From assembly GCA_950097015.1 (NCBI GenBank), contig CATNEN010000012.1:3224001-3288000 (forward strand): a stretch of 64,000 bases of DNA. The letters run 5' to 3'. Source of the DNA: Macrostomum hystrix (Eukaryota; Animalia; Platyhelminthes). The notes below the pieces were generated by a model. The model made no database searches. It was not told where the DNA came from and was given only the letters and a program-made list of their open reading frames with translations. How positions within the stretch are numbered: the stretch's first letter is position 1; each line of letters opens with the position of its first letter. Positions 11,301 to 44,145 of the stretch are shown in pieces. A program made the translations under genes and the position numbers.

Positions 11301-13520
11301 GGAGTATCCACATTATCCACATGTCCTTGCGTGAGTGTCCACATTATCCACGAGTCGATTTGTGAGTATACACATTATCCATGAGTCCTTGTGGGAGTAT
11401 ACACATTATCCATGAGTCCTTGTGGGAGTATACACATTATCCATGAGTCTTTGTGGGAGTATACACATTATCCATGAGTCCTTGTGGGAGTATACACATT
11501 ATCCATGAGTCTTTGTGGGAGTATCCACATTATCCACATGTCCTTGCGTGAGTGTCCACATTATCCACGTGTCCTTGCGTGAGTATCCACATTATCCACG
11601 TGTCCTTGCGTGAGTATCCACATTATCCACGTGTCCTTGCGTGAGTATCCACATTATCCACGTGTCCTTGCGTGAGTATCCACATTATCCACGTGTCCTT
11701 GCGTGAGTATCCACATTATCCACGTGTCCTTGTGTGAGTGTCCACATTATCCACGAGTCGGTTTGTGAGTATACACATTATCCATGAGTCCTTGTGAGAG
11801 TATACACATTATCCATGAGTCCTTGTGGGAGTATACACATTATCCATGAGTCCTTGTGGGAGTATACACATTATCCATGAGTCCTTGTGGGAGTATCTAC
11901 ATTATCCACGTGTCCTTGCGTGAGTATCCACATTATCCACGTGTCCTTGCGTGAGTATCCACATTATCCACGTGTCCTTGTGTGAGTATCCACATTATCC
12001 ACGTGTCCTTGCGTGAGTATCCACATTATCCACGTGTCCTTGCGTGAGTATCCACATTATCCACATGTCCTTGCGTGAGTGTCCACATTATCCACGAGTC
12101 GATTTGTGAGTATACACATTATCCATGAGTCCTTGTGGGAGTATACACATTATCCATGAGTCCTTGTGGGAGTATACACATTATCCATGAGTCCTTGTGG
12201 GAGTATACACATTATCCATGAGTCTTTGTGGGAGTATCCACATTATCCACATGTCCTTGCGTGAGTGTCCACATTATCCACGAGTCGATTTGTGAGTATA
12301 CACATTATCCATGAGTCCTTGTGGGAGTATACACATTATCCATGAGTCCTTGTGGGAGTATACACATTATCCATGAGTCTTTGTGGGAGTATACACATTA
12401 TCCATGAGTCCTTGTGGGAGTATACACATTATCCATGAGTCTTTGTGGGAGTATCCACATTATCCACATGTCCTTGCGTGAGTGTCCACATTATCCACGA
12501 GTCGATTTGTGAGTATACACATTATCCATGAGTCCTTGTGGGAGTATACACATTATCCATGAGTCCTTGTGGGAGTATCCACATTATCCATGAGTCCTTG
12601 TGGGAGTATACACATTATCCATGAGTCCTTGTGGGAGTATCTACATTATCCACGTGTCCTTGTGTGAGTGTCCACATTATCCACGAGTCGATTTGTGAGT
12701 ATACACATTATCCATGAGTCCTTGTGAGAGTATACACATTATCCATGAGTCCTTGTGGGAGTATACACATTATCCATGAGTCCTTGTGGGAGTATACACA
12801 TTATCCATGAGTCCTTGTGGGAGTATACACATTATCCATTAGTCCTTGTGTGAGTGTCCACATTATCCACGTGTCGATTTGTGAGTATACACATTATCCA
12901 TGAATCCTTGTGTGAGTGTCCACATTATCCACGTGTCGATTTGTGAGTATACACATTATCCATGAGTCCTTGTGGGAGTATACACATTATCCACGTGTCC
13001 TTGTGTGAGTGTCCACATTATCCACGTGTCGATTTGTGAGTATACACATTATCCATGAGTCCTTGTGGGAGTATACACATTATCCATTAGTCCTTGTGTG
13101 AGTGTCCACATTATCCACGTGTGGATGTGTGAGTATACACATTATCCATGAGTCCTTGTGGGAGTATACGCATTATCCATGAGTCCTTGTGGGAGTATAC
13201 ACATTATCCACGTGTCCTTGTGTGAGTGTCCACATTATCCACGTGTCGATTTGTGAGTATACACATTATCCATGAGTCCTTGTGGGAGTATACACATTAT
13301 CCATGAGTCCTTGTGGGAGTATACACATTATCCATTAGTCCTTGTGGGAGTATACGCATTATCCATGAGTCCTTGTGTGAGCATCCACATTATCCATGAG
13401 TCCTTGTGTGAGTATCCACATTATCCACGTGTCGATATGTGAGTATACGCATTATCCATGAGTCATTGTGTGTGTTCACATTATCCATGAGTCCATGTGT
13501 GCGTATCCTCATTATCCAAG
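8310..13520. repeat. Satellite: 27-bp units (8310-8630) grading into a ~4.9-kb array of 31-bp units CACATTATCCACGTGTCCTTGCGTGAGTATC
   Basis: Direct reading; periods measured between recurring motifs. Confidence 0.97.
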
Positions 13521-14035
13521 AGCTCTTGTGTTTCCAGAAGTCTGCTATTTTTTACTTTTAAACTTGGCACTAAATGTTATGAGGCATTGCTTATTAGCTG
13601 ATTAATATTAATTGAACGTAGGACGCTTGAAGTGCTGTATTTAGTTAACTCATTCATAGCTGAACAACAGAAGTAAAGCAAGTAGTTATTTCGCATGAGA
13701 ACACTGGGATTTAGGATGTTGACAGCCAATGCGAAGACATACGCAAACAGGAGGGAAATACAAACGGCTTTATTAATCTTGGGTTCAGGTACTACAGACA
13801 TTAATATTAAAAGGCGTAGATAGACAAAGAAGCGACTTTCGATAAATATGAAAAAATTAATCCCAAATTGTGTAGTATGCAAAATCATACAAAAACTACA
13901 TTGTGTCGTCTCTTTCTAACCCCAGTTGAATTCCATATTCTTACTCAGAAAATAAGTTGATGCGCTACTGTCAGAAGTATGCTTAGCGCGCGAATCGTAA
14001 GCTTTTGCAATAGAGAAATTAAGATGCCGAATAAT

Positions 14036-17000
14036 TTATACCGGCTTGTAGTCCAGCTTGGTCTCCAGCTTTTTCGTGTCGGCAATTTTGCGCACAGCCT
14101 TCATAAAGTCCTCCTCAATGACATAGTCCCGCTCTGCCCGGATGGCGAACATGCCGGCCTCTGTGCAGACGTTGCGCAAATCGGCCCCATTAAAACCGTC
14201 GCTGAGTTTCACAACGGCCTCCCAGTCAACTTCGCCGTGCTTGGCGATGGGGCCGGAGTGAATCTTGAGGATGTCCAAACGGCCCAGTTCGTTAGGCAGG
14301 GGAATTTCAACTTTGCGGTCTAGCCGGCCCGGGCGAAGCAGGGCGGGGTCCAGAGTGTCTGGCCGGTTGGTGGCCATAATGATCTTCACGGCGCCCAGGG
14401 CGTCGAAACCGTCCATCTGGTTCAGCAGCTGCGGTGGATTGGAGAGCGGATGGAGGCGCGTTTGTGAGAGCGGATAGAGGGGCGGATGAAAGAGCGGATG
14501 GTGGGGTGGATGTGCGAGCGGCTGGTGGGGCGGATGGTGGAAGGATGGGAGAGCGGCTGGTGGGGCGGATGGTGGAAGGATGGGAGAGCGGCTGGTGGGG
14601 CGGATGGTGGAAGGATGGGAGAGCGGCTGGTAGGGCGGATGGTGGAAGGATGGGAGAGCGGCTGGTGGGGCGGATGGTGGAAGGATGGGAGAGCGGCTGG
14701 TGGGGCGGATGGTGGAAGGATGGGAGAGCGGCTGGTGGGGCGTATGAGAGAGCGGCTATTGGGCCGGATGGTAGAGCGGCTGGTGGGGCGGATGTGAGAG
14801 CGGATGGTGGGGCGGATGTGAGAGCGGATGGTGAGGGGATGTGAGAGCGGATGGTGGGGGGATGTGAGAGCGGATGGTTGGGCAGATGTGAGAGCGGATG
14901 GTCGGGCGAATGGGAGAGCGGATGGTGGGGATGTGAGAGCGGATGGTGGGGGGATGGGAGAGCGGCTGGTGGGGCGGATGTGAGAGCGGATGGTTGGGCA
15001 GATGTGAGAGCGGATGGTCGGGCGAATGGGAGAGCGGATGGTGGGGGGATGAGAGACAGGATGGTGGAGAGAGCTGATGAAAAACCGGTAAGATGGGCGG
15101 ATGAAAAAGCGGATTATCGTCGAACACATCAGGCCTCGTCGGTAATTAAAGAAAATAAATAAAGTGTAACTGCAAAAATAGGAGCCAACCTCCATAAGGG
15201 TTCGCTGGATCTCGCGGTCAGCCGAGGTGCCCTCGCTGAATCGCCGGCCACCGATAGCGTCAATCTCGTCCATGAAGATAATGCATGGCTCGTGTTCGCG
15301 AGCGTAGCCGAACATCTCGCGAATTAGGCGGGCGCTCTCGCCGATGTATTTGTCAACAATTGAGGAGGCCACAACTTTAAGGAATTTGGCGTCGATTGAC
15401 GAGGCAATAGCCCGGGCCAGAAGGGTCTTGCCTTGAGATTGGAGGTACGATTGGCGTTTTTAGCATACTACTAATTAGACGAAAACTAGAAGTAGTATAT
15501 TTCACATTGAATCCAAATTCAGAAATAAATTAGGCAGTTTAGTCCCCCCGGATCACAGCCAGTGCTCACCAGTTCCAGGCGGGCCGTAGAGCAGGCAGCC
15601 CTTCGGCGGCGAGATGCCGACTCGCTGGAATAGCTCGGGATTTATCAGCGGCAATTCGATCACTTCGCGCAGCTCGCGAATCTGATCGGATAGGCCGCCG
15701 ATGCTAGAGTAGGACACGTCGCCTGGATCCTCGGCGCTCATGTTGTACACTAAAGGATCTACTTCGCGTGGCAGACAGCGCATAATGGTCATAGTGGTCA
15801 TGTCCAGAGCCACCCTGGTGCCACTTTTCAGTTTGGCCTTGTCAATGCTGCGCCGGCAGCCAACCAGGTAGCGGGGCCCATTGGTGGCTTTCACTATGAA
15901 CTTCTCTTCGTGCAGCTGGCGCAGCACCTCGCCGACAATCTGGCCGACACTCTGCAGAGCTTTTAGCGCATCCTCGGACTTGTCAAACTCTTTAGTTAGG
16001 TCACGTAGCTTCTCGCGGGCTGGTGTGAGATTGTGAAATAGAGATACAACATGAGCACAGCATTTGCTTGCAAAACAATAGACTTTATTGAAACCAGCAA
16101 ACATTGCACTGATTGTTATCGGGTCCATGAGACTTGCCCGCAGGAGATTTGCCAGCCGAGGTTTGCCCGCAGAGATTTGCCCGCAGTGCATTCTGCCCGC
16201 AGGAGATTTTCCCGTCGAGATTTGCCAGCAGTGCATTCTCCCCGCAGAGATTTTCCCGCAATGCAGTTTTAATCTTGCAAAAATCGACTTATACTTATCG
16301 AAATTATTTACCTGCCAGATTTCAACCGTGTGAATCTGAAATTCTTACTGCCGCAAATGCATAAGATATTTCTTTGGCATTCCGCAGACACCTCAAATTT
16401 CCTTTCCGCTAAATTACTGTAGCCTGTTCTATAATATTTTGTAGCAGCAATTTTTTGCTGGTGCCTGGTGGTAGGGATGGTAAAATCCCGGCTAGTTTCC
16501 AATCCCAGGATTGTCGGGTTCGGGATATTCCTGTCCAACTCCCATAAAATCCCCAGCATTTTCAGTCCCAGCAAATGCCGAAAAATTGAAAATCCCGCTG
16601 AATGGTGGGCAATTTTAAGTCCTGGGATTGGAATTCCAGGTGCTTGCTCTCAAATCCCGGTCCCAGTATTGGAATCTCTAGGTGTTGGAGCGCTGTCTGT
16701 TTCAAAGTCACATGTCAGCCGCCTGGATTTTATCACCTCGATCTACTCAACCACCGAACGACAAATCCAGTAAATAAGCCATGGAGTCCTATATGGTGCA
16801 TGTCGGGGACCCCACGACATTTTATAATCTGGCCCTTACATAGAGTATGAGTATGCAGAGCATTTTCATCTTATGCATTTGCGGCAGTAAGAGTTTCAGA
16901 TTCACACGGTTGAAATCTGGCAGGTAAAAAAAATTGATAAGTATAAGTCGATTTTTGCAAGATTAAAACTGCATTGCGAGAAAATCTCTGTGTGCAAATC

Positions 17001-23594: not shown

Positions 23595-25101
23595 ATGGCA
23601 AACGCAAGCAATTTTCTGCAGAAATTTCGCGACAAAGACACCCGCGCATTCAAGAACTTCACTGCCACCCAGTTCCTGGAGGTTTGGAGCCACTACGATT
23701 TGGACGGCAGTGGCTACATTGAAGGCGGGGAGCTGGACAGTTTCCTCCGCGAGTTCGTCAGCTCCATCATTCCCGGCAAGATTGGCGACGAGGTTGTGTC
23801 AGACAGCGCGTTGAACGACCTCAAGGAGGAGTTCATGCGAGCGTACGATGAGAACGAGGACAACAAAATTGAAATCGGCGAGCTGGCCCAGATGCTGCCG
23901 ACAGAAGAGAACTTTCTGCTGCTCTTCCGACGCAGCAACCCGCTGTCCAGCAGCGTCGAGTTCATCCGGGTCTGGCGCCAGTTCGACAAGGACAGCTCCG
24001 GGCACATCGACGCCGACGAGCTGGACAGCTTCCTGCGCCACATTTTGGGTGACAAGCACAGAGTCAGCGAGGACCAGATGCGGGAGTACCGTGACACCAT
24101 CCTGCGACTCTTTGACAAGTGGGTTGGGCTGCGACTGGCTGCATCAGTCTGGGAGGCAAAACTTACGAAGGCCAACCTCCTAGGCACAGTGAGGGTGTAC
24201 ACAACCTGAGCTCCGGGCCCACATTCCACTGTGGGGTATTTCAAATACCCAATGCCTACTTCACAATAGCTCCCAAATAGTATCTATAAACTGTATTTTT
24301 GTATCTCCTAAAATTTTAAGCCAATCGCCATGAAAATTCATCTCTCGGGCTAAAATTTTCCACTCTATTTAATGAAACAATTTTCAGAATCACAAAACAT
24401 CTGCATCGTAGAGATACTCAATGATTGAGCGTATCTTGTTGCAAAAACCACCAGTACACACATGCTTTTTCTGCTCACAAAATTTTATAATGTAACATGT
24501 CGATTGTTGACCATTTAGGATTAATTTAATAGCAGTTTTTTTCATTTTCAAACCAATATGGATTCACCATCAGTTCGTATCAGTTCATATCAGTGGATAT
24601 CAGTTCGTATGGACTTTCACGAAAATCGGTCATTCGGTTTGGGAGCTATCGTGAAGTAGGGGAAAATAGCGTGATCTTTCTACTGGTAATAAAGAATCGC
24701 AACAAAGACTGCCGCAATCCATCAGGAACGGCGACGGTCAGCTGCAGCTGAGCGAGCTGGCGCGCCTGCTGCCCGTCAAGGACAATTTCCTGGCCAAGCC
24801 GCTGTTGAAGAACGCCGCTCGCCTCACCGGCCTGGAGATCGACCGACTGTTCCGCAAATACGACGCTGACCGGAGCGGCCAGATCGAAGGCGACGAGCTG
24901 GCCGGCCTACTTAAGGACCTCCTGGAGATCACTGGCGAGGACTACGACGAGGCCAAGATGTTGTACTTTCGGGACGTCATCATGGAGCAATGCGATGTTG
25001 ACAAGGACGGCCGGATCGCCAGGGACGAGCTCAAGATGATTCTCATGCAGCACAAGAGAATGGCCGAGGAGCAGGCGGCCACTGAGGGCGGCTGCCAGTG
25101 A
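23595..25101 (+). CDS. Calbindin/calretinin/secretagogin-family hexa-EF-hand protein (~299 aa)
   Basis: Exons 23595-24118 (phase 2) and 24726-25101; EF loops DLDGSGYIEGGE, DENEDNKIEIGE, DKDSSGHIDADE, DKNGDGQLQLSE (across the junction), DADRSGQIEGDE, DVDKDGRIARDE; LPTEENFLL. Confidence 0.95.
24236..24660. mobile_element. MITE-like element in the calbindin intron (family also at ~21785, ~44244, ~57290-57570)
   Basis: Inverted termini CCTACTTCACAATAGCTCCCAAA / TTTGGGAGCTATCGTGAAGTAGG plus palindrome GGTATTTCAAATACC; internal sequence shared with the other copies. Confidence 0.8.
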
Positions 25102-27622: not shown

Positions 27623-27919
<297 letters not shown>

Positions 27920-30596
27920 CTACTGACTGTGCGGTCAGGTGTCTCTGCTGGGTCTTATAGATTTGCTGACAGCTGCTTTTAGGAGCACTATGTGGCTTTC
28001 TCTTGAAGATATTGAATTAAAATGTTGGAATTTTCTTTTCTAAAAGTTGGACAAAAATTATTCTATTGTTGGCAATCCCAAGGCGCGGTTGGCTTGACAA
28101 AAAAGTTTTTCTCCTGAGAGTAAATTTAGGGACGCTGATCAGTGGCTGCCACTGAGGGACAGAAAATGTATATCTAGATCTAGACTCTCGTAGAAGAGAA
28201 ATGCTTTTCCGCTGCGGGAGAGCTTGCAAAACGCCGGTGTGTGTGCTTGCTTTGAAAGCCTCTTAAAACTGCAAGATCGAGGCTTGGATTACGAGTGAGA
28301 GCTGCCGGGTACAGCTGGGGGAGAGGCTAGCAGGAGGATACACAGAGCAGTAGAGTTCAGTTTCTGCCATCGACTGTACTGCATGGGATCGGGAAGCGAG
28401 TAGCTGAGGGATAGAGGGGAGAAGAAGGGGATTGGGCCTAGAGAGCTGGGAGAATCCATTCCGATCCTTCTGTCCTCCTATCCGAGGCCAATCGATAAAT
28501 ACTGGCCTGGGCCGTACTTTTCGGTTTTCCACATCCCTTCATTTTCCTCCATGCAGTCTCCCTCTTATTTTACGGTTTTCCTAATTTTTGCTCCCCTCGT
28601 GATGCGGGAGAATCGCGGGCTGCAAAACAAGTTAATGGGGAACTACATCAATCACAAACTGGACTCGGGAATCCGGTGAAAACGGTCTCCCCAGAAACTC
28701 AATTTAGTTGGCTATAGCATATATAAATAGTGACCTGGGTTATTCGGATATGCGCTATAGTCCTTAAACCAACGCCTATAGCCCGGAGATATTAGCGCTC
28801 GCGTATATTATAAAAAAGTACATGTAATGAACAAATTCTATCCCAAAGTAGTTGTCCAGTCATATAGACATGAACAAACAACTTCCCGCCCAAGGACAAC
28901 TAGGAGTAGACCTAGTAGATCTAGTGGTCCTTGTTCCAGTCATGCCAGGAGCATTATTGAAGGAATAAAGAAAATCTAGACTGGGGCAAGAATACATGCG
29001 CAATAAATATAAAGCGCAAACTTGTGAGTACCCAGCTATTCCTTCGTCTTTCATTTTTTATTTAATTCTTCGTTATAGCTGGTTATATATTTTTTGTTGC
29101 ACCCAATTGAGATTATATAGACAAATACTTTTTCAAGTAAAAAAATTCCATAAGAAAATTACAGGGATCGATCCTAACAGTCTTTATACTGCGTTGTATA
29201 AAATAATGGGAGGAGAACACATGTGAGATGATAGACATAAAGATAGAGATATTATAGAGAATAAGATAAAGATTGATTTGAAGTACTTTGTAGTAATTGT
29301 TTTTTTACTTTGCTTAAGTAAATAGGCATGATCTAAGCTAACTTAACGGCTTGAAGGGTAGAAAATTTTGCATTACATTTAAACAAAGTTTGTGTGCGGT
29401 AAAAAATTAAAGCTTTAAAGGCAAAAATACATAGAACCCAATTGACAAAATATAAAACCTGAAGCCAATAAATATAATAACTCTCGTACACATGAACGAA
29501 ACAAGTATAAATAACTTGCGACCGATTTTAAAAGCTCATTACAGTTTCTTTTATTGAAATTGATTTCTACATATTGATAAATTTTAATATTGTCCTATAG
29601 CGTTTAAATAACACGCCAACGCGACAATGCAGTGGTAAGGTTAGATCGATCTCCCGACTTCCTAAATGAGCTGTCTGTAACTTATAATGCTTAAAATACG
29701 TACTTAAAACGTTTTGAAAGCAAGTAATAAAAACTGATTATTAATATTTGCATGTGTACTTTTAATTTTAATTAGGATCTAATAAAAATACTCCTCCAGT
29801 AAAAAAAACATTTTTATTTTGGCACTAAATATCAGATGACGTAGAACATTCTTCTGTTCCATAACCAATGTAATGTATGGATATCCCTGACATTTAGTAG
29901 TTAGAAAAATTAGAAAAAAATTGTCGCTTTGATCTTGTGAATTTGCAACCTAAAGCATTCCATTATTTGTGACTAAGAAAATCAATTTATTAACTTAACA
30001 TATTTCAACGTTTTATAGTGTATTTAATGGAGAAAACTTTCTCAGAAAAATAATTTCTACATTTCAAAACAAAATCGATATTTCTTAGTTAAAGCTTGGC
30101 TTAAACTTCAGATTGCAAAGCTATTGCTAAAAGTCAATTGAAAGAATCTAAATCCCCCGAGTAAAATATCATCATCTAAAAATGACTTCACCCTCAAAAT
30201 CCTTAAATAATTTTTATAACTTAAAATACCCTCTTTAATGCTAAAAATTCTCTCAAATATTACATTCTATTGTTTTTGTATGCTTTAACAATGTTACTCT
30301 AGTGACTCTTGTAAGTAAGCAGAGTCTAAACCTCATTTGCGTGCTAGGAACGAAAATTTTCAAATAGAGAATGCATAATTGTCTACTGCTAGCCGGGACT
30401 ACTACAAACATGCAATAGAAAATAAAAGTTTTTATATTGGAATAGGAAATTAGTTTTTTGTCAAAACGGTTCAGTCTTTGTCAGTCTTTAAATTAGTTGA
30501 CTTAATAAATAATTATATAGTTTAATGCAAGCAATCATTTTCAGCTATCGGTCGCCACACGAGCTCCAGTCGTTTAACATAAATTTGGGTCGAGAA

Positions 30597-33500
30597 ATGT
30601 CGGACTCGGAGCGGATCTGGAAGTACGGCCACCTGCAGCAGAGGCGGAGCAGCTCTAGAAAAGATCGATGCCAGCGTCGCTTTGTCCAACTGCTGGCCAA
30701 CTGCGTGCGAGTCTACGAGGACGACAGCCTGCGGCGACTGCGGCATCAGGTGCGTAATGGAAAGGTTATATTGCGACCGAGTGTACGCGCATTTTAACAG
30801 AAGGTACGGTAAACCCGAAAATTGCACTCAACGTGATCTTGAACTCTTGGCAACTCGATACATTTTATTATGGGGATATCGTCAGTTTTATAAATGCGTT
30901 TGCTTTGGCCGATCTGGCCAAGCAGCAAATTCGAGATAAATATAATTATATAATAAGTTCATAGATTCATCGTCTAGCCCGAAACCGTATTGTACAGGAG
31001 ATATTGGAGAGTGCGTTATTGTCATTTTCTCAAAGCATTCCATCCGAGCCAATTAGAAATCGAAAATCCCAGTAGAAATCACAATTCTCCCATACATAAT
31101 AAATTAACAATGCTCCAACTCGCATTCAGCCCGCACTGGACAGCGTGGACATTGTTGAGCACAGTGAAGTTGTGTTCGAACTTGCCAGGCGTCGGGACGC
31201 TGCCAGCAGTGTCGTCTCACTAATGTTCACCGCGGAGGACTCCAAACAGGCGGCCTGCTGGCTCAAGGAGCTGTACTGGCTGCGCTACAGAGCCCGCGGC
31301 GGTGGCATATTCGGCCGCAGCCTGTCGGATGTTATGCGGGCGCAGGTGAGCGGCAGATTGCTGAGCAGATGACTGTGAGTGCAGTCGCCCACTAACTGTA
31401 TCCCGTCATCACATATCATACTCACTGCTCACTACCCACCACCCACTCCCTGCTCACCCGCCACCCGCCATTCACTCCCTGCTCAACAACTATTCTTTCC
31501 TGCTCACCTCCATTCTTTCCTCCATTCACTCATTGCTCACCCCACCACCCACTGATTGCTCACCCCTCCACCTACTCACTGCTCACCCCACCACCCACTC
31601 ACTGCTCACCCCTCCACCTACTCACTGCTCACCCACCACCCAATCCCTACACACCGACATATGCCACCCACCGCCATGTGCCGAACCTGTCAGGTTGACG
31701 CAGGCGGCCTCACAGACGTGCCTCAAATAGTGTTCGACTGCGTCTCCTACCTGTCAACCGAGACCTGCTTGTGCACCGAGGGCATATTGCGCAAGTCCGG
31801 CCAGAAGAAGGTCGTGACGGCGCTGCGGCTGGAGTATCAGCGCGGCGAGTCACCCGACCTGACCTCGTATAGCCCGCACGATGCCGCCTCCTTGCTCAGA
31901 ATTTACCTGAGCGAGCTGCCTGAACCCGTGGTTCCGTACGTTGCTTATGCCAGCTTTCTCACTGCCGGCCAGAAGATCAACTTGGGCGATGCGAACTCGG
32001 AACTGGACAACCTGCAGGTGTGCGAGGCTCTTTATTCTTATCTACGAGTATGTTATTATCAGTAGCTTTTTTCTCACAACCTGTGCCAATGCAGGAAATG
32101 GTTCGAATCCTCCCAGTTGAGAATCGGAACCTGCTAAAACTTCTCTGCTGCATGTTCCATCTAGTGCAACAGAAGAGCGACCGCAACCTCATGGATGCTA
32201 CCGCCCTTGCCACGCTGTTCTCATCCAGTGTGCTCAGCGATGAGAACGACCGTCTGCTGGTGAGATATGCCACTTTTTGTTTCCCAGCGCATGTTGCTAC
32301 GTACATATCTTGCCATCCCTGTCTCTCCTCATCTTTCTCTTCCCACCTGTCTCTTCCCATCTGTCTCTTCCCACCTGTCTCTTCCCACCTGTCTCTTCCC
32401 ACCTGTCTCTTCCCACCTGTCTCTTCCCACCTGTCTCTTCCCAACTGTCTCTTCCCACCTGTCTCTTCCCACCTGTCTCTTCCCACCTGTCTCTTCCCAC
32501 CTGTATCTTCCCACCTGTCTCTTCCCAACTGTCTCTTCCCACCTGTCTCTTCCCACCTGTCTCTTCCCAACTGTCTCTTCCCACCTGTCTCTTCCCACCT
32601 GTCTCTTCCCACCTGTCTCTTCCCACCTGTCTCTTCCCACCTGTCTCTTCCCACCTGTATCTTCCCACCTGTCTCTTCCCACCTGTTTCTTCCCACCTGT
32701 CTCTTCCCACCTGTCTCTTCCCACCTGTCTACTCATCTATGCCTGACTCTCTATCTCATCTATGCCTGACTCTCTATCTCATCTATGCCTGTCTCTCTAT
32801 CTCATCTCTGCCTGACTCTCTATCTCATCTTTGCCTGATTCTCTATCTCATCTATGCCTGACTCTCTATCTCTTCTATGCCTGTGTCTCTCTATCTCATC
32901 TTTGCCTGATTCTCTATCTCATCTCTGCCTGACTCTATCTCATCTCTGCCTGACTCTCTATCTCATCTCTGCCTGACTCTCTATCTCATCTATGCCTGAC
33001 TCTCTATCTCATCTCTGCCTGACTCTCTATCTCATCTCTGCCTGACTCTCTATCTCATCTATGCCTGACTCTCTATCTCATCTATGCCTGACTCTCTATC
33101 TCATCTCTGCCTGACTCTCTATCTCATCTATGCCTGACTCTCTATCTCATCTCTGCCTGACTCTCTATCTCATCTCTGCCTGACTCTCTATCTCATCTCT
33201 GCCTGACTCTCTATCTCATCTATGCCTGACTCTCTATCTCTTCTATGCCTGTGTCTCTCTATCTCATCTTTGCCTGATTCTCTATCTCATCTATGCCTGA
33301 CTCTCTCTATCTCATCTCTGCCTGACTCTCTCTATCTCATCTATGCCTGACTCTCTCTATCTCATCTCTACCTGTCTCTATCTTGACTTATCCGCAGGGC
33401 GGTCCAAAGACGCAGAGTGGAGGCGAATGTCACCTATTCCGCTAACTGTCTGTCTCTTTCTTATCTCAGCTCAATCTTTATCTTATCTCTATCTGCCTGT

Positions 33501-36500
33501 CTCTCTAACTCATCTTTATGTCTCTCTCTCTGTCTCTCTGTCTCCTTCTTAATTTGTTTTTTAATTTATTTTGTCTCCTTCTGTCTGCCTTTTTGTTCAG
33601 TCACTCACGCATTGTCTTGAATTCTTATGCAACAAATTGAGTCCTCGCAGTAAGAGCCCGTTCATACGGCTGTGAGCCAATTCAGGCCGAGAGTCAAAAT
33701 ATATTTAAGTTTAACAGAGCGATAAGGAAGGGGGGTTGGCGGTACGATAACAAGAGTGCGCGACTGAGGGTAGGAGAGGAGGCTAGAACGTGAGCGGCGG
33801 ACCAATCAGAGAGGAGGAAAGAAAGAAAGGATAGAGAATGAGAGATCAGCCGCAGAGATAACGAGAGAGAAAGAACTAGATTGAACTGGACGATGTAAAC
33901 AAGAAAAGTGCAGAGAACCAAAGAGTGAATAGAGGACAGAAGGCAGAGACGAAAGTCGCGACACTCCCCCAAAAAATGTAACATTTTTTTAGAACAAGAG
34001 GTTAGAAATAACTTAGTTAGATTCTCCATAGATTTACATTCTGATCTGCAAAACAGGCAAATTAAAGCAGAGATCAGACTCTGAAGAGCTTCAAACAAAT
34101 AGAGTTGTGAATACACAAAACTAAAACTTTTACGAATTCTTGCAGACGTTGATTTTACACACAAGCCTCGACGCGTAGAGTAGAGCCACAACTCTCCCCC
34201 CGAAATTGAAGAATGTTTTAATCGAAACTTTCAAATTAAAAACTAATTTAACGAGAGAATTTCGCCCTATAAGGAAAAAACAATAATGCATTTAACGAAC
34301 AAATATCAATTGATGTCTACAATATTATACTCGTGCAGACTATTGCGAAACGAGGGAAGGCTAACGAGACAGACACCAACATAGGTTCTTCGATAAGTTA
34401 AATAAATTTTACGTTTTGAAACAACGAAGCATTTGTTGTAGAAAATGAAAAAAAAGATTTTTTTTCGAGCGTCCACAAACAAATAACGAAATGGAGAATA
34501 TGAAACTCCTGCCGGCACTGCCAACGTAATGTAATGAAAACGAGCGAATGAATCGTGCGGCAATCCTGAAGAACGAATGTGAGACTAGGAACCGGCGGTC
34601 ACCACACGGGACGAAACTGGGGCGAGAAAAGATGAGACGAGACGAGGCTAGACGAGACGAGTCCTGTGGCGATCCCGGCGAACGAATGAGAGACCAGGAA
34701 CCGGCGGTCGCCACATGGGACGAACTGAGGCGAGACGAGACGAGCTGAGACGAGACGAGTCCTGTGGCGATCCCGGCGAACGAATGAGAGACCAGGAACC
34801 GGCGGTCGCCACATGGGACGAACTGAGGCGAGACGAGACGAGCTGAGACGAGGCGAGTCCTGTGGCGATCCCGGCGAACGAATGAGAGACCAGGAACCGG
34901 CGGTCGCCACATGGGACGAACTGAGGCGAGACGAGACGAGCTGAGACGAGACGAGTCCTGTGGCGATCCCGGCGAACGGATGAGAGACCAGGAACCGGCG
35001 GTCGCCACATGGGACGAACTGAGGCGAGACGAGACGAGCTGAGACGAGGCGAGTCCTGTGGCGATCCCGGCGAACGAATGAGAGACCAGGAACCGGCGGT
35101 CGCCACATGGGACGAACTGAGGCGAGACGAGACGAGCTGAGACGAGACGAGTCCTGTGGCGATCCCGGCGAACGAATGAGAGACCAGGAACCGGCGGTCG
35201 CCACATGGGACGAACTGAGGCGAGACGAGACGAGCTGAGACGAGACGAGTCCTGTGGCGATCCCGGCGAACGAATGAGAGACCAGGAACCGGCGGTCGCC
35301 ACATGGGACGAACTGAGGCGAGACGAGACGAGACGAGACGAAGATCGTTTTATGCAAAATCAATACAGGCCGGCGGACGAGAACGACGCTGATGAGATGA
35401 AATCCAGAAGGAGCTGGCAGAAAATAATTCTACATTTGGGTTCGATTTCGTTCGGGCGCCATGTCTTGAATTCTTATGCAACAAATTGAGTCCTCGCAGT
35501 AAGAGCCCGTTCATACGGCTGTGAGCCAATTCAGGCCGAGAGTCAAAATATATTTAAGTTTAACAGAGCGATAAGGAAGGGGGGTTGGCGGTACGATAAC
35601 AAGAGTGCGCGACTGAGGGTAGGAGAGGAGGCTAGAACGTGAGCGGCGGACCAATCAGAGAGGAGGAAAGAAAGAAAGGATAGAGAATGAGAGATCAGCC
35701 GCAGAGATAACGAGAGAGAAAGAACTAGATTGAACTGGACGATGTAAACAAGAAAAGTGCAGAGAACCAAAGAGTGAATAGAGGACAGAAGGCAGAGACG
35801 AAAGTCGCGACACGCATTCACCCAGTCACTGACACATTCATCTAGTCACTGACACATTCATCTAGTCACTGACACATTCATCTAGTCACTGACACATTCA
35901 TCTAGTCACTCACACATTCATCTAGTCACTCACACATTCATCTAGTCACTCACACATTCATCTAGTCACTGACACATTCATCTAGTCACTCACACATTCA
36001 TCTAGTCACTCACACATTCATCTAGTCACTCACACATTCATCTAGTCACTGACACATTCATCTAGTCACTCACACATTCATCTAGTCACTCACACATTCA
36101 TCTAGTCACTGACACATTCATCTAGTCACTGACACATTCATCTAGTCACTCACACATTCATCTAGTCACTGACACATTCATCTAGTCACTCACACATTCA
36201 TCTAGTCACTCACACATTCATCTAGTCACTGACACATTCATCTAGTCACTCACACATTCATCTAGTCACTCACACATTCACCCAGTCACTCACACATTCA
36301 TCTAGTCACTGACACATTCATCTAGTCACTCACACATTCATCTAGTCACTCACACATTCATCTAGTCACTGACACATTCATCTAGTCACTCACACATTCA
36401 TCTAGTCACTCACACATTCATCTAGTCACTGACACATTCATCTAGTCACTCACACATTCATCTAGTCACTCACACATTCACCCAGTCACTCACACATTCA

Positions 36501-38309: not shown

Positions 38310-41300
38310 ATGACTCAGAGACGCGGTGACCACAGACAGCATGCTAAGCGGCTGCTGCAACTGGAGTTTCCTGACACCAACGAGCGTATTCTGCGCGAGA
38401 CCCTCGAGGCGGTAAGTGGCGGAGTCGTATTAAAACTTCTCGTTTATTTATTTGTTTTTAAATCTGCTTTTCAAGAAGCAATAAATTTAAAAGTAAGATA
38501 GTCGAATGAAGAAATTTACCTCCGCAACTTATTTAAATATTTGATGCAAAACTGCCAGTCCGGAAATTCTGGGATCAAAGCTGGCACTGCCAGTCCGGAA
38601 ATTCTGGGATCAAAGCTGGCACTGCCAGTCTGGAAATTCTGGCATCATGGCTGGCACTGCCAGTCTGGAAATTCTGGGATCAAAGCTGGCGCTGAGCCAG
38701 TCTGGAAATTCTGGGATCAAAGCTGGCGCTGAGCCAGTCTGGAAATTCTGGGATCAAAGCTGCCAGACGTCATTCAGGGTCAACTTAGATCGACAATTTT
38801 TCCCTTACGAGAGGGAATGTGAGATTCAAATTTCGCTTCTAGCTTCGGTTCGTTTCAAATTTAGACAGTTCTAGTTAATACATTTTTCATGCTGAAGATT
38901 CATTTGTAAGCAGACATAATTAGGAAGTGCATCATGTTGGGTTTTGTACGCACAGTCAGGTGGGGCGGGAAGCAGGCAGGCAGGAAGGCTGAACTTGTCA
39001 AAGCCAGTTATTAGAAAGTTCTGCTTTAATTTCTCTTGACACACTTGGCTGGTATCTATCTATAAGGCCAGCTTCCGTAGAAAAAATTGTCTTTTAGCCT
39101 TGCCTCCTGCTAGCTGGGCTATAGTTGTGTAGTTTTATATTTAATGTGCTAAAATTTTTCACCGTGCAGAGCTGTGCGCATTTATATTTGATCTGCGCTA
39201 ATATAATTAAGCCAAATATAGTAACTAAGTCATACTTCAGTTGGCAATAGTAGTATTAAGTATAGTATGTATGACTGTAATGTTTTCTGACCCAGCAGCT
39301 ACTGTAGCTAGAATCGCAGCAGAAACTGGAGCTGTAGCTAGAATCGCAGCAGGAGCTGTAGCTAGAATCGCAGCAGAAACTGGAGCTGTAGCTAGAATCG
39401 CAGCAGGAGCTGTAGCTAGAATCGCAGCAGGAGATGTAGCTAGAATCGCAGCAGGAGCTGTAGCTAGAATCGCAGCAAGAGCTGTAGCTAGAATCGGAGC
39501 AGGAGCTGTAGCTTGAATCGCAGCAGACACTGAAGCTGTAGCTAGAATCGCAGCATCTAGAATCTCAGCATGAGCTGTAGCTAGAATCGCAGCAGCTAGA
39601 ATCGCAGCAGGAGCTGTAGCTGGAATCGCAGCAAGAGCTGTATTAGAATCACTGCAAGAGCTGTATTAGAATCTCAGCATGAGCTGTAGCTAGAATCGCA
39701 GCAGCTAGAATCGCAGCAGGAGCTGTAGCTGGAATCGCAGCAAGAGCTGTATTAGAATCGCAGCAGAAGCTGTATTAGAATCGCAGCAGGAGCTGTATTA
39801 GAATCGCAGCAGGAGCTGTATTAGAATCGCAGCAGGAGCTGTATTAGAATCGCAGCAAGAGCTGTATTAGAATCGCAGCAGGAGCTGTATTAGAATCGCA
39901 GCAGGAGCTGTATTAGAATCGCAGCAAGAGCTGTATTAGAATCGCAGCAGGAGCTGTATTAGAATCGCAGCAGGAGCTGTATTAGAATCGCAGCAAGAGC
40001 TGTATTAGAATCGCAGCAGGAGCTGTATTAGAATCGCAGCAGGAGCTGTAGCTAGAATCGCTGCAAGAGCTGTATTAGAATCGCAGCATGAGCTGTATTA
40101 GAATCGCAGCAAGAGCTGTATTAGAATCGCAGCAAGAGCTGTATTAGAATCGCTGCAAGAGCTGTATTAGAATCGCTGCAAGAGCTGTATTAGAATCGCT
40201 GCAAGAGCTGTAGCTAATATCGCAGCAAGAGCTGTAGCTGGAATCGCAGCAGGAGCTGTATTAGAATTGCAGCAAGAGCTGTAGCTGGAATCGCAGCAGG
40301 AGCTGTATTAGAATCGCAGCAAGAGCTGTATTAGAATCGCAGCAAGAGCTGTATTAGAATCGCAGCAAGAGCTGTAGCTAGAATCGCAGCATGAGCTGTA
40401 TTAGAATCGCAGCAGGAGCTGTATTAGAATCGCAGCAAGAGCTGTATTAGAATCGCAGCATGAGCTGTATTAGAATCGCAGCAGGAGCTGTATTAGAATC
40501 GCAGCAAGAGCTGTATTAGAATCGCAGCATGAGCTGTATTAGAATCGCAGCAAGAGCTGTATTAGAATCGCAGCAGGAGCTGTATTAGAATCGCAGCAAG
40601 AGCTGTATTAGAATCGCAGCAAGAGCTGTATTAGAATCGCAGCAAGAGCTGTATTAGAATCGCAGCAGGAGCTGTATTAGAATCGCAGCAGGAGCTGTAT
40701 TAGAATCGCAGCATGAGCTGTATTAGAATCGCAGCAGGAGCTGTATTAGAATCGCAGCAGGAGCTGTATTAGAATCGCAGCAGGAGCTGTATTAGAATCG
40801 CAGCAGGAGCTGTATTAGAATCGCAGCAAGAGCTGTATTAGAATCGCAGCAGGAGCTGTATTAAAATCGCAGCAGGAGCTGTAGCTAGAATCGCTGCAAG
40901 AGCTGTATTAGAATCGCAGCATGAGCTGTATTAGAATCGCAGCAAGAGCTGTATTAGAATCGCAGCAGGAGCTGTATTAGAATCGCAGCAGGAGCTGTAT
41001 TAGAATCGCTGCAAGAGCTGTATTAGAATCGCAGCATGAGCTGTATTAGAATCGCAGCAAGAGCTGTATTAGAATCGCAGCAAGAGCTGTATTAGAATCG
41101 CTGCAAGAGCTGTATTAGAATCGCTGCAAGAGCTGTATTAGAATCGCTGCAAGAGCTGTATTAGAATCGCAGCATGAGCTGTATTAGAATAGCAGCAAGA
41201 GCTGTATTAGAATCGCAGCAAGAGCTGTATTAGAATCGCTGCAAGAGCTGTATTAGAATCGCTGCAAGAGCTGTATTAGAATCGCTGCAAGAGCTGTATT

Positions 41301-44145
41301 AGAATCGCAGCATGAGCTGTATTAGAATCGCAGCAAGAGCTGTATTAGAATCGCAGCAGGAGCTGTATTAGAATCGCAGCAAGAGCTGTATTAGAATCGC
41401 TGCAAGAGCTGTATTAGAATCGCAGCATGAGCTGTATTAGAATAGCAGCAAGAGCTGTATTAGAATCGCAGCAAGAGCTGTATTAGAATCGCTGCAAGAG
41501 CTGTATTAGAATCGCTGCAAGAGCTGTATTAGAATCGCTGCAAGAGCTGTATTAGAATCGCAGCATGAGCTGTATTAGAATAGCAGCAAGAGCTGTATTA
41601 GAATCGCAGCAAGAGCTGTATTAGAATCGCTGCAAGAGCTGTATTAGAATCGCTGCAAGAGCTGTATTAGAATCGCTGCAAGAGCTGTAGCTAATATCGC
41701 AGCAAGAGCTGTAGCTGGAATCGCAGCAGGAGCTGTATTAGAATTGCAGCAAGAGCTGTAGCTGGAATCGCAGCAGGAGCTGTATTAGAATCGCAGCAAG
41801 AGCTGTATTAGAATCGCAGCAAGAGCTGTATTAGAATCGCAGCAAGAGCTGTAGCTAGAATCGCAGCATGAGCTGTATTAGAATCGCAGCAGGAGCTGTA
41901 TTAGAATCGCAGCAGGAGCTGTATTAGAATCGCAGCATGAGCTGTATTAGAATCGTAGCAAGAGCTGTGCTAGAATCGCAGCAGGAGCTGTGCTAGAATC
42001 GCAGCAGGAGCTGTATTAGAATCGCAGCAAGAGCTGTATTAGAATCGCAGCAAGAGCTGTGCTAGAATCGCAGCAGGAGCTGTATTAGAATCGCAGCAAG
42101 AGCTGTATTAGAATCGCAGCAAGAGCTGTATTAGAATCGCAGCAGGAGCTGTATTAGAATCGCAGCAAGAGCTGTATTAGAATCGCAGCAAGAGCTGTGC
42201 TAGAATCGCAGCAGGAGCTGTATTAGAATCGCAGCAAGAGCTGTATTAGAATCGCAGCAAGAGCTGTGCTAGAATCGCAGCAGGAGCTGTAGCTAGATTT
42301 ATTCTATAATATACATGCTCCTGTAATTGCAGCACGACTTCTCCCTGAGTGAATGCCGAGAGTCGCTGTCGCGGCTTCACGGCCTGAAAGACTCCAAAAA
42401 GCCGAAGCATCGCTTCAAATTTCGCTGGCCAAAAATTGGCGGCGGCGGCGGCGGCGGCTACGGAGGCGAGGTCCGTCGGAGCAGTTTGCTTTGTCCGCCA
42501 CCGGCCATAGCGGTCCCACTGAACAATGGCGCTAGCCGGAGCGTTCTCAGCGGATTCGGCGCCTGCGTCGGCGGCGACGGTGTCGGCATTGAGCAAAAGT
42601 CGGACATGGATTACCATTGTAAGATGTGATTGCTTAGCTCATTGCCATAGCTCATTGCCATAGCTCATTGCCATAGCTCATTGCCATCTCGCTCATTGCC
42701 ATAGCTCATTGCCATAGCTCATTGCCATCGCTCATTGCCATAGCTCATTGCCATAGCTCATTGCCATAGCTCATTGCCATAGCTCATTGCCATAGCTCAT
42801 TGCCATAGCTCATTGCCATAGCTCATTGCCATAGCTCATTGCCATAGCTCATTGCCATCGCTCATTGCCATAGCTCATTGCCATAGCTCATTGCCATAGC
42901 TCATTGCCATAGCTCATTGCCATAGCTCATTGCCATCGCTCATTGCCATCGCTCATTGCCATAGCTCATTGCCATCGCTCATTGCCATCGCTCATTGCCA
43001 TAGTTCATAGCTCTGAGACCGGGAAACCTGTATTGAAACCCGTGGCCCTCTTGACAGTGGCCGTCCAGCGTCAAAGCCTCGAGCGAGTGGCTACGGTCCG
43101 CACCAGCTCGGCGGGCAGCCTGACTCAAGCCCGGCGAGCCGTGAAGGATCGCCGCGAGCTGCTGCTGCTGCTGCTTGAGCATGGCGCTGAGAGTGGCGCC
43201 GCGCTATTTGAAGCTGCCAGGCAGACACTGCTCGGCGAATTTCGCCTCTTAAATCGCCAGTGGACGACGCAAAACTCTGGCCCGCAGCAGCATCAGCAGC
43301 AGCAGCTGGCTTTGGCAAGTCCGGCTGTTTCGCGGCGAAAACATAAATGCTGCAGCAATTCACACGGCGAGGCAAACGGTCCCTTGCAGCAGCAGCGGCA
43401 GCAGCAGCAGCAGATGTTCCGGCATCAGCGTGTATCGGCTTCTTTGTTTCCGATGGCTGCTGCTGGGGCACCAGGTGAGATGTGGCCACGAGACTGCTGC
43501 TTCATGTCATGTGGTTGTGTTTTTTTAGATTTTAAGCAGCAAGAATCATCTGAACTACAATGCCCGTTTCGAAACTAGACTGCTAGCATGAAAATGTGAT
43601 CCTTCTGTCTACCCCATAGCTAGAAAGGTCACGTGACGTATGTAAAACCCTTAGCTAGAAGAGTCACGTGATCTATGTGAAACCTTTAGCTAGAAGAGTC
43701 GCGTGATCTATGTGAAACCTTTAGCGGGAAGAGTCACATGATCTATGTGAAACCTTTAGCTAGAAGAGTCACGTGATCTATGTGAAACCTTTAGCTAGAA
43801 GAGTCACGTGATCTATGTGAAACCTTTAGCGGGAAGAGTCACGTGATTTATGTGAAACCTTTAGCGGGAAGAGTCACTTGGCCATTGTGAGACTCTCAGC
43901 TCATAATTTTTCAATCGCCACCCATTCCAGGTGTCGCCAAGCTGCCGCCGCCGCTGTACCGGCCGGCCTCCGTGCCTCAAGAGCCACCGCAGCCGCCCGC
44001 CAGGCCGTGGCAGTGCGAGCGATGCACTTTTGAGAATCATCCCGACATGGAGGAGTGCGAAATGTGCTCAGCCCTGCGACCGGGCACTCAGATGAGGCCC
44101 AGATCCGTCAGCATCTCCCTTGATCGGCCGCTGAGAAACAGCTAA
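38310..44145 (+). CDS. TAB2/TAB3-like adaptor (N-terminal CUE, C-terminal NZF zinc finger), ~357 aa
   Basis: Exons 38310-38411, 42333-42618, 43004-43474, 43931-44145, phase-compatible GT-AG. CUE LQLEFPDTNERILRETLEA|HDFSLSECRESL spans junction 1; NZF WQCERCTFENHPDMEECEMC. Start codon less certain. Confidence 0.85.
38550..38770. repeat. 35-bp repeat GCCAGTCTGGAAATTCTGGGATCAAAGCTGGCACT
   Basis: Direct reading. Confidence 0.9.
39290..42295. repeat. 23/24-bp minisatellite (GAGCTGTATTAGAATCGCAGCA) ~3 kb in TAB2-like intron 1
   Basis: Direct reading. Confidence 0.97.
42640..43003 (+). repeat. 13-bp array CTCATTGCCAT(A/C)G forming almost all of TAB2-like intron 2
   Basis: Direct reading. Confidence 0.96.
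43615..43880. repeat. 35-bp repeat with GTCACGTGAT core in TAB2-like intron 3
   Basis: Direct reading. Confidence 0.92.

What the first reader, a model, noticed from the sequence alone, without database searches (positions are those of the whole stretch)
33613..35812. LTR retrotransposon whose LTR end is built from a spliced-leader-like sequence
Seen: a complete non-coding LTR element (351-bp TG..CA LTRs identical by eye, 5-bp TSD CGCAT, PBS, PPT). On the element strand the last 58 nt of each LTR are GCCGTATGAACGGGCTCTTACTGCGAGGACTCAATTTGTTGCAT+AAGAATTCAAGACA, about 32 nt downstream of a TATA-like TATATTTT and further downstream of a CCAAT (ATTGG) box. Knowledge: the first 44 nt match the Macrostomum SL exon as I recall it (37/44); flatworm mRNAs receive such leaders by trans-splicing. 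Inference: the element's own promoter would start transcription at a genome-encoded SL mimic, so its RNA looks like a trans-spliced host mRNA. That could aid capping, export, translation or escape from silencing. I do not know of a described SL-mimicking LTR family in flatworms.
Basis: partly seen in the sequence, partly recalled or inferred. Interest (0 to 1): 0.93.

Follow-up and report, generated by a model that had tools for sequence, protein, structure and literature searches.

The report
Spliced-leader copy inside a retrotransposon LTR
A very young, non-coding LTR retrotransposon in a Macrostomum flatworm genome carries a diverged copy of the worm's spliced leader at the end of both LTRs; it is most likely a fossil of an element RNA that was trans-spliced before being reverse-transcribed, and the idea that it mimics host mRNA is untested.

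Summary
Window 33613-35812 (minus strand) is an intact 2,200-bp non-coding LTR element. It has two 351-bp LTRs with 0 mismatches, TG..CA ends, a 5-bp CGCAT duplication, a PBS and a PPT. LTR positions 294-337 match nt 1-44 of the published Macrostomum spliced leader (SL) at 38/44. The best match elsewhere in the window scores 13 against 32.

Two genuine SL RNA genes fetched from public contigs show that the similarity covers only the exon. The LTR has no GT donor, no intron and no Sm site, so it is not an SL RNA gene. The host is a Macrostomum syntenic with M. lignano. The true SL is invariant in every source examined, so the LTR copy (7/45 changes, terminal AUG lost) is an old, diverged derivative in a recently active element.

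The best reading is that an element RNA was trans-spliced 14 nt upstream of its PBS and then reverse-transcribed, which placed the SL in both LTRs. A 2025 paper reports partial SLs next to LTR/LINE elements in parasitic flatworms and gives the same explanation.

The one AT-rich block, about 30 nt upstream, fits a TATA box or equally a poly(A) signal. Whether transcripts start at the SL copy is undecided. No other family member could be reached.

The parts
33613..35812 (-). Complete non-autonomous LTR retrotransposon, 2,200 bp
   Evidence: Identical LTRs, target-site duplication, PBS and PPT. No coding capacity.
35462..35812 (-). 5' LTR (351 bp, TG..CA)
   Evidence: 0 mismatches to the 3' LTR.
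33613..33963 (-). 3' LTR (351 bp, TG..CA)
33608..33612 (.). Target-site duplication CGCAT, left copy
   Evidence: The reconstructed empty site restores the 20-bp minisatellite register.
35813..35817 (.). Target-site duplication CGCAT, right copy
35476..35519 (-). SL-exon-derived segment in the 5' LTR (LTR positions 294-337 = SL nt 1-44, 38/44 identical)
33627..33670 (-). SL-exon-derived segment in the 3' LTR
35462..35475 (-). Last 14 nt of the 5' LTR (AAGAATTCAAGACA). Inferred remnant of the original U5 with the integrase end; the same 14 nt lie at 33613-33626.
   Evidence: There is no similarity to SL RNA beyond short AAGA and AAGACA matches.
35544..35554 (-). AT-rich block AATATATTTTG (LTR 259-269; same block at 33695-33705). 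TATA-like, and it holds the only poly(A)-signal-like hexamer, AATATA.
   Evidence: Its function is inferred, not shown.
35651..35655 (-). Inverted CCAAT box (ATTGG, LTR 158-162; same at 33802-33806)
   Evidence: Motif only.
35438..35461 (-). Primer binding site TGGCGCCCGAACGAAATCGAACCC
   Evidence: Directly abuts the 5' LTR. The tRNA it matches was not identified; there is no tRNA gene in the window.
33964..33976 (-). Polypurine tract TTTTTTGGGGGAG
   Evidence: Directly abuts the 3' LTR.
34634..35341 (-). Internal array of 7.2 copies of a 98-bp GC-rich repeat
   Evidence: TRF, 98% matches. ORFs through it have no homologues.

Best explanation
The SL-like segment is a retro-copied spliced-leader exon, inherited as part of the R/U5 end of the LTR. 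This origin is inferred.

Proposed sequence of events:
1. An ancestral element RNA was SL trans-spliced at an acceptor 14 nt upstream of its PBS.
2. Minus-strand strong-stop DNA, primed at the PBS, copied those 14 nt and then the SL up to its capped first nucleotide.
3. After strand transfer, reverse transcription placed this new R/U5 end in both LTRs, as it does for everything between the RNA 5' end and the PBS.
4. The altered LTR stayed competent and the lineage kept transposing. The SL copy accumulated 7 changes, including loss of the terminal AUG, while the host SL stayed invariant.

The present copy is a very recent insertion of a non-autonomous member, which must be mobilised in trans by an unseen autonomous partner. 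In this reading the segment now simply serves as leader/U5 sequence, and possibly as a short R if transcription starts at it. No benefit from resembling host mRNA is required.
For: Shown:
- The similarity begins at SL nt 1 and ends at nt 44 of the 45-nt exon. It does not extend into the promoter or intron of two genuine SL RNA genes, L005:615-724 and L007:1589-1697. That is the signature of an RNA-derived exon copy bounded by an RNA 5' end and a splice junction.
- Five trans-spliced mRNAs from a metatranscriptome show the SL ending in GCATG followed by unrelated sequence. The LTR shows the same pattern, with G45 replaced by A.
- The segment lies between U3 and the PBS-proximal 14 nt. That is exactly the region of an LTR that is copied from the 5' end of the genomic RNA (retroviral-type reverse transcription; established knowledge).
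- There is no GT[G/A]AG donor, no Sm site and no 3' hairpins, so it is not an SL RNA gene.
- The host SL is identical in M. lignano, M. cliftonense, M. hystrix, two environmental SL RNA genes and five mRNAs. The LTR copy differs at 7/45 positions although the two LTRs are identical. The capture is therefore much older than this insertion.

Precedent:
- PMC12582326 found 597 SL-like loci next to LTR/LINE elements in parasitic flatworms and proposed the same origin.
- An RNA of the LTR element Cer1 in C. elegans is SL1 trans-spliced.
Against: - Only one element is available, and its two LTRs are copies of each other by mechanism. No second family member could be fetched, so persistence in a family is inferred from divergence alone.
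- A trans-spliced RNA lacks the 5' R. The first strand transfer in the founding event must therefore have been non-homologous or end-to-end.
- No poly(A) remnant or microhomology is visible at the junction CACA|GCCG.
- Short AAGA and AAGACA matches after the exon, and a retained UCUUA:UAAGA pairing, could instead hint at an origin from unspliced SL RNA.
- The ancestral acceptor site cannot be seen.
- The host species' own SL was not read from this genome, only from relatives.
Confidence: 0.6

Rival explanations
1. Functional mimic. The LTR promoter starts transcription at or within 1-3 nt of SL nt 1. Element RNAs then look like trans-spliced host mRNAs and gain in stability, export, translation of a partner's gag-pol, or evasion of small-RNA silencing. 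The SL origin is the same as in the best explanation, but the segment is kept by selection.
For: - The TATA-like motif starts 33 nt before SL nt 1, and CACA (initiator-like) lies immediately before it.
- The AT-rich block is the only one in a CT-rich LTR.
- Three of the six substitutions in nt 1-44 fall in the 4-nt loop of the 5' CCGU/ACGG hairpin, and the stem is kept. The post-hoc hypergeometric P is 0.006.
- The segment has survived in a lineage that was active very recently.
Against: - No transcript data are available.
- The same AT block is equally well placed as a poly(A) signal, about 29 nt before the junction.
- There are 7/45 differences and the AUG is lost.
- There is no Sm site, so no route to a trimethylguanosine cap (established SL RNA biology).
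- The element is non-coding.
- The three loop changes may be one mutational event.
- The folds are no more stable than shuffles (z -1.6 for the 58-nt segment; z about 0 for the longer leader).
- Any sequence in R/U5 is retained for mechanical reasons.
Confidence: 0.17
2. Origin from the SL RNA itself, not from a trans-spliced element RNA. During strong-stop synthesis, reverse transcriptase switched from the element's U5 to a co-packaged unspliced SL RNA, or the LTR recombined with an SL RNA gene. The donor GT was later lost.
For: - After GCAT the LTR reads AAGAATTCAAGACA, while the genuine genes read GGTAAGACACC. AAGA and AAGACA therefore recur.
- The exon UCUUA still pairs with UAAGA, as the genuine exon pairs with its donor region.
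- Packaging of small host RNAs into retroviral particles is known (recalled, not tested here).
Against: - The matches are 4-6 nt, and the last four (GACA) are constrained by the TGTC..GACA terminal inverted repeat.
- No further intron similarity, no Sm site and no hairpins II/III are present.
- This route needs an extra 3-nt loss or 8-nt replacement at the donor. The trans-splicing model needs a single G-to-A change.
Confidence: 0.12
3. Ongoing use. Genomic RNAs are made by trans-splicing the authentic SL onto read-through transcripts just upstream of the PBS. The LTR-encoded SL copy in the 3' LTR serves as the R homology for first-strand transfer.
For: It would explain why an SL copy is tolerated or useful at exactly this place. 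An AG lies at LTR 339-340, just after the SL copy.
Against: - Each such cycle should refresh the LTR with the authentic SL, yet the copy differs at 7/45 positions.
- CATAAG does not fit the M. lignano trans-acceptor motif [T/C]TNCAG.
Confidence: 0.05
4. Chance resemblance or assembly artefact.
For: None found.
Against: - The alignment score is 32 against a background maximum of 13, with E = 5e-10 against a genuine gene.
- The target-site duplication and empty-site register are perfect.
Confidence: 0.01

Closest known systems
SL-like loci associated with LTR and LINE elements in parasitic flatworms (PMC12582326, Mol Biol Evol 2025)
   Same: Leader-only SL sequence with no other SL RNA feature, next to retrotransposons. 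The origin proposed there is the one favoured here: integration of trans-spliced retrotransposon transcripts.
   Different: Those loci were discarded as noise, described as partial leaders within 500 bp of repeats, and not dissected. Here a near-full-length leader (nt 1-44) is a defined structural part of both LTRs of an intact, just-inserted element. The host is a free-living macrostomid.
Relic spliced leaders of dinoflagellate retrogenes (Slamovits and Keeling 2008; reviewed in PMC6050394, PMC5585692)
   Same: A DNA-encoded SL marks reverse transcription of a trans-spliced RNA (one search list; mechanism from established literature).
   Different: Those are host mRNA retrocopies, usually dead ends for the SL. 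Here the SL has entered the replicating structure of a mobile element and is propagated with it.
TRIM / ta-TRIM non-autonomous LTR elements (PMC4558846)
   Same: Small non-coding LTR element with PBS, PPT and target-site duplication in a flatworm. In ta-TRIM, LTR-initiated transcripts interact with trans-splice acceptor sites.
   Different: This element is larger (2.2 kb, 351-bp LTRs) and has an internal 98-bp tandem array. ta-TRIM LTRs are not reported to contain the SL.
Cer1 (Ty3/gypsy) of C. elegans
   Same: An LTR element RNA that receives an SL by trans-splicing near its 5' end.
   Different: In Cer1 only the subgenomic spliced RNA is trans-spliced. The SL is not encoded in the LTR.
Genuine Macrostomum SL RNA gene (PMC8629364; L005:615-724, L007:1589-1697)
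   Same: Shares the 44-nt exon sequence at 86% identity.
   Different: The LTR has no GT donor, no intron, no Sm-like site, no hairpins II/III and no shared upstream sequence.
SL-gene-specific non-LTR retrotransposons of trypanosomatids (SLACS, CZAR, CRE1; recalled from memory, not tested)
   Same: An association between retroelements and spliced-leader sequence.
   Different: Those elements insert into SL RNA genes. They do not carry an SL copy as part of their own terminal repeats.

Membership tests
LTR retrotransposon (structural definition) | Two direct long terminal repeats ending TG..CA | tested here: met
   351 bp each, 0 mismatches.
LTR retrotransposon (structural definition) | Short target-site duplication | tested here: met
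   CGCAT on both sides; the empty-site register is restored.
LTR retrotransposon (structural definition) | PBS abutting the 5' LTR and PPT abutting the 3' LTR | tested here: met
   The tRNA was not identified.
Autonomous LTR retrotransposon | gag and pol coding capacity | tested here: not met
   No Pfam family in any ORF. No homologues.
TRIM (terminal-repeat retrotransposon in miniature) | Non-coding internal region | tested here: met
TRIM (terminal-repeat retrotransposon in miniature) | Miniature size (about 1 kb or less, LTRs about 100-250 bp; recalled definition) | tested here: not met
   2,200 bp with 351-bp LTRs. Better described as a TRIM-like non-autonomous LTR element.
SL RNA gene | Leader exon at the 5' end | tested here: met
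   38/44 identities to nt 1-44.
SL RNA gene | GT splice donor directly after the exon | tested here: not met
   The LTR reads GCATAAGA where the genes read GCATGGTAAGA. No GT[G/A]AG lies nearby.
SL RNA gene | Sm-like site flanked by hairpins in a transcript of about 109 nt | tested here: not met
   The alignment with L005 and L007 ends at the exon.
SL-tagged retrocopy (relic SL) | SL exon only, bounded by exon nt 1 and the splice junction, embedded in retro-copied DNA | tested here: met
SL-tagged retrocopy (relic SL) | Demonstrated trans-splicing of the source transcript | not testable with these tools
   No transcript data for this species were reachable.
Retrozyme (non-autonomous LTR element with hammerhead ribozymes) | Hammerhead ribozyme in the LTRs | tested here: not met
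   No Rfam match at gathering score or at E<=5 in 33400-36000, apart from two chance-level hits.

The most novel reading that the evidence does not exclude
An active LTR retrotransposon family in Macrostomum has adopted a genome-encoded spliced leader as the first nucleotides of its transcript. Its RNA, and that of an autonomous partner sharing the LTR, would pass as a trans-spliced host mRNA. The host could not target that leader with small RNAs without hitting roughly 30% of its own mRNAs.
Probability: 0.15. Interest if true: 0.85.

Novelty: new variant of a known kind. Interest (0 to 1): 0.5.

Why it matters
This locus shows, with base-level boundaries, that a spliced leader can enter the replicating part of an LTR retrotransposon and be carried along by a lineage that is still mobile. 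It gives a concrete mechanism for the many unexplained SL-like loci next to repeats in flatworm genomes, which confound SL RNA gene annotation and SL-based read trimming. It also offers a natural construct for asking what the SL sequence does when it is encoded rather than trans-spliced: the same leader without the Sm-dependent cap. Macrostomum is suited to that question because transgenesis is available (M. lignano) and 5'/3' end data exist (M. lignano and related species). If the mimic reading were true, it would be a new kind of transposon camouflage.

Tried and rejected
- Finding other family members through protein handles failed. The LTR U3 ORF, the ORF through the 98-bp array against 1.84 billion representatives and the ORF reading through SL plus PBS all found nothing.
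- The viral contig scan was empty.
- The metagenome and prokaryote-genome scans found only authentic SLs, in mRNAs and in two SL RNA genes, and no LTR copies.
- The M. lignano syntenic locus L008 holds no copy of the element.
- Rfam gave nothing: no SL family, hammerhead or other RNA. The retrozyme idea was rejected.
- A PBS-like motif in the 98-bp repeat scored 19, within the range of shuffled units (maximum 24). Dropped.
- Folding of the 98-nt unit and of the putative leader is no better than shuffles. No structural claim is made.
- The M. lignano LTR heat-stress paper mentions no SL in LTRs, and no supplements are held.
- The bacterial promoter/terminator scan is irrelevant to a eukaryote.
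- The 2015 M. lignano genome paper, requested as PMC4603488, is not held in the library.

Full report
**1. What is there**

Window 33613-35812 is a complete LTR element read on the minus strand.
- The two 351-bp repeats (33613-33963 and 35462-35812) are identical at every base. They start TG and end CA.
- They are flanked by CGCAT on both sides.
- Deleting the element and one CGCAT restores the 20-bp periodicity of the minisatellite that begins at the insertion point. The duplication is therefore a true target-site duplication, and the insertion occurred into the first unit of that array.
- On the element strand the 5' LTR is followed at once by TGGCGCCCGAACGAAATCGAACCC, a PBS. The 3' LTR is preceded at once by TTTTTTGGGGGAG, a PPT.
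- The 1,498-bp interior has no gag or pol. It holds an AT-rich stretch and 7.2 copies of a 98-bp GC-rich repeat.
- The long ORFs listed there are open frames through that repeat. They have no Pfam family and no homologue among 1.84 billion representatives.
- The element is thus a non-autonomous, TRIM-like LTR retrotransposon. Its identical LTRs indicate a very recent insertion.

**2. The spliced-leader similarity is real**

- The published SL of M. cliftonense is 45 nt. The M. hystrix SL (43 nt) and the M. lignano SL (35 nt) are identical to it over their lengths.
- LTR positions 294-337 on the element strand match SL nt 1-44 at 38 of 44 positions without gaps. The differences are A7T, A8G, G9A, T14G, A27G and A38G. 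In addition G45 is A, so the terminal ATG is lost.
- The local alignment score is 32. The best score anywhere else in the 64-kb window, on either strand, is 13. Pattern searches expect no chance match.

**3. Genuine SL RNA genes for comparison**

- A degenerate pattern scan of public metagenome contigs returned five contigs that begin with the authentic SL followed by unrelated coding sequence. These are trans-spliced mRNAs from one metatranscriptome.
- The same scan returned one contig, L005, with the SL in the interior.
- A scan of prokaryotic genome contigs returned L007, a contig binned to a Flavobacteriaceae MAG.
- L005:615-724 and L007:1589-1697 both show the 45-nt exon, then GTAAGACACCG, a hairpin, an ATTTTTAG Sm-like site and a terminal hairpin.
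- Both fold far better than shuffles, with z of -3.4 and -4.8. They fit the description of the 109-nt M. lignano SL RNA gene.
- They differ from each other in the intron by paired changes, but not at all in the exon.
- blastn of the whole element against L005 aligns only LTR 294-337 to exon nt 1-44 (E = 5e-10). Nothing aligns upstream or downstream, and the multiple alignment shows the same.
- The LTR has no GT after the exon, and no GT[G/A]AG donor anywhere near.
- The segment is therefore an exon-only copy and not an SL RNA gene.

**4. Host**

- The window carries host exons: proteasomal ATPase, a calbindin-32-like EF-hand protein and a RhoGAP domain.
- The best protein matches are M. lignano calbindin-32, at 89-92% identity.
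- The M. lignano scaffold NIVC01001066.1 (L008) has the same gene order. Exons are 77-86% identical at the nucleotide level and the non-coding DNA is unalignable.
- The source is therefore a Macrostomum that is not the Mlig_3_7 copy, either another species or a diverged subgenome.
- The SL exon is identical in three named species, two environmental genes and five mRNAs. The LTR copy is thus a diverged derivative and not the host's working SL. This is an inference, because the host's own SL RNA gene is not in the window.

**5. How it got there**

- In retroviral-type reverse transcription, everything between the RNA 5' end and the PBS is copied into the strong-stop DNA and ends up at the 3' end of both LTRs.
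- An element RNA that had been trans-spliced 14 nt upstream of its PBS would therefore yield LTRs of the form U3(-R)-SL-14 nt. That is what is seen.
- The upstream boundary is SL nt 1, the RNA cap end. The downstream boundary is the exon end, the splice junction, with one G-to-A change.
- The founding event needed a non-homologous or end-to-end first strand transfer, which is a weak point of this model.
- The 7/45 divergence, against zero divergence between the LTRs, implies that the altered LTR has been propagated for a long time and was active very recently.
- The same origin has been proposed in passing for 597 SL-like loci next to LTR/LINE elements in parasitic flatworms.
- Trans-splicing of an LTR-element RNA is documented for Cer1.

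**6. Does transcription start at the SL copy?**

- The LTR is CT-rich, with one AT-rich block, AATATATTTTG at LTR 259-269.
- Read as a TATA box, it predicts a start at about LTR 291-294, the CACA just before SL nt 1.
- Read as the poly(A) signal AATATA, which is the only such hexamer in the LTR, it predicts cleavage about 29 nt downstream at the same CACA. A TTTGTTG stretch inside the SL copy could then serve as the downstream element.
- Under the second reading R lies upstream, with the inverted CCAAT at LTR 158 at a typical distance from a TATA-less start, and the SL copy is U5.
- Sequence alone cannot decide between the two.

**7. The mimicry hypothesis**

For:
- the geometry described in section 6;
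- the clustering of three substitutions in the loop of a retained CCGU/ACGG hairpin (post-hoc P 0.006);
- survival of the segment in an active lineage.

Against:
- the copy is imperfect and has lost the AUG;
- there is no Sm site, so no route to a trimethylguanosine cap (established SL RNA biology);
- the element is non-coding;
- R/U5 sequence is retained for mechanical reasons anyway;
- the predicted structures are not better than shuffles.

I put this reading at about 0.15-0.2.

**8. An SL RNA origin**

The short AAGA and AAGACA matches to the donor region, and the retained UCUUA:UAAGA pairing, keep an origin from unspliced SL RNA alive at about 0.12.

**9. Limits**

- Only one element is available, and its two LTRs are not independent.
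- Every attempt to fetch relatives failed.
- No transcript data were reachable.
- The tRNA matching the PBS was not identified. The first 12 nt resemble the tRNA-Lys3 PBS of HIV-1 from memory only.

**10. Verdict**

- The SL origin is strongly supported.
- The interpretation as a host-mRNA mimic is possible but unsupported.
- The phenomenon is a well-resolved new variant of something already noted in flatworms and dinoflagellates.

Noticed in passing
window 1-64000: The window is dominated by dozens of minisatellite arrays with periods of 10-169 bp, some several kb long (for example 8623-13531, period 31, and 39302-42297, period 23). Most long ORFs in the window are open frames through such arrays.
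   Followed up: partly
window 15553-16236, 23595-25079, 27672-27886, 30593-32264: Host exons for a proteasomal ATPase, a calbindin-32-like protein, an InaF-motif protein and a PH/RhoGAP protein lie in the same order as on M. lignano scaffold NIVC01001066.1 (L008). Exon identity is 77-86% and intergenic DNA is unalignable. The element lies about 1.3 kb beyond the last aligned RhoGAP exon, antisense to that gene. It may sit in one of its introns; this was not resolved.
   Followed up: partly
L007:1589-1697 (JAGQZA010000190.1): A contig binned to a Flavobacteriaceae MAG (HKST-UBA79) carries a complete Macrostomum-type SL RNA gene. The contig is probably flatworm DNA mis-binned into a bacterial genome.
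   Followed up: partly
L005:615-724 and 1774-2919 (Ga0302322_100095745): A metagenome contig holds a genuine SL RNA gene about 1 kb upstream of an intronless Na/K-ATPase beta-chain ORF (Pfam E = 1e-49). It gives the SL RNA promoter and intron sequence of an environmental Macrostomum-like worm.
   Followed up: partly
L005 vs L007, SL RNA introns: The two genuine SL RNA genes have identical exons. In hairpins II and III they differ by changes that keep the pairing, which fits the three-hairpin model.
   Followed up: no
window 34634-35341: The element's internal 98-bp repeat (7.2 copies, 98% alike) contains a GC-rich inverted repeat and is open in all three frames on the element strand. Its fold is no better than shuffles, and its origin is unknown.
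   Followed up: partly
window 35350-35529 (minus strand): The A7T/A8G change creates an ATG inside the SL copy. It opens a 55-codon frame running through the PBS into the interior. No homologue was found, so it is probably meaningless.
   Followed up: yes
literature, PMC8629364: The sequence first published as the M. lignano SL RNA is reported there to map to the 5' end of a protein-coding gene, Mlig013257.g1. That is another genome-encoded SL copy in this genus and would be worth comparing with the LTR copy.
   Followed up: no
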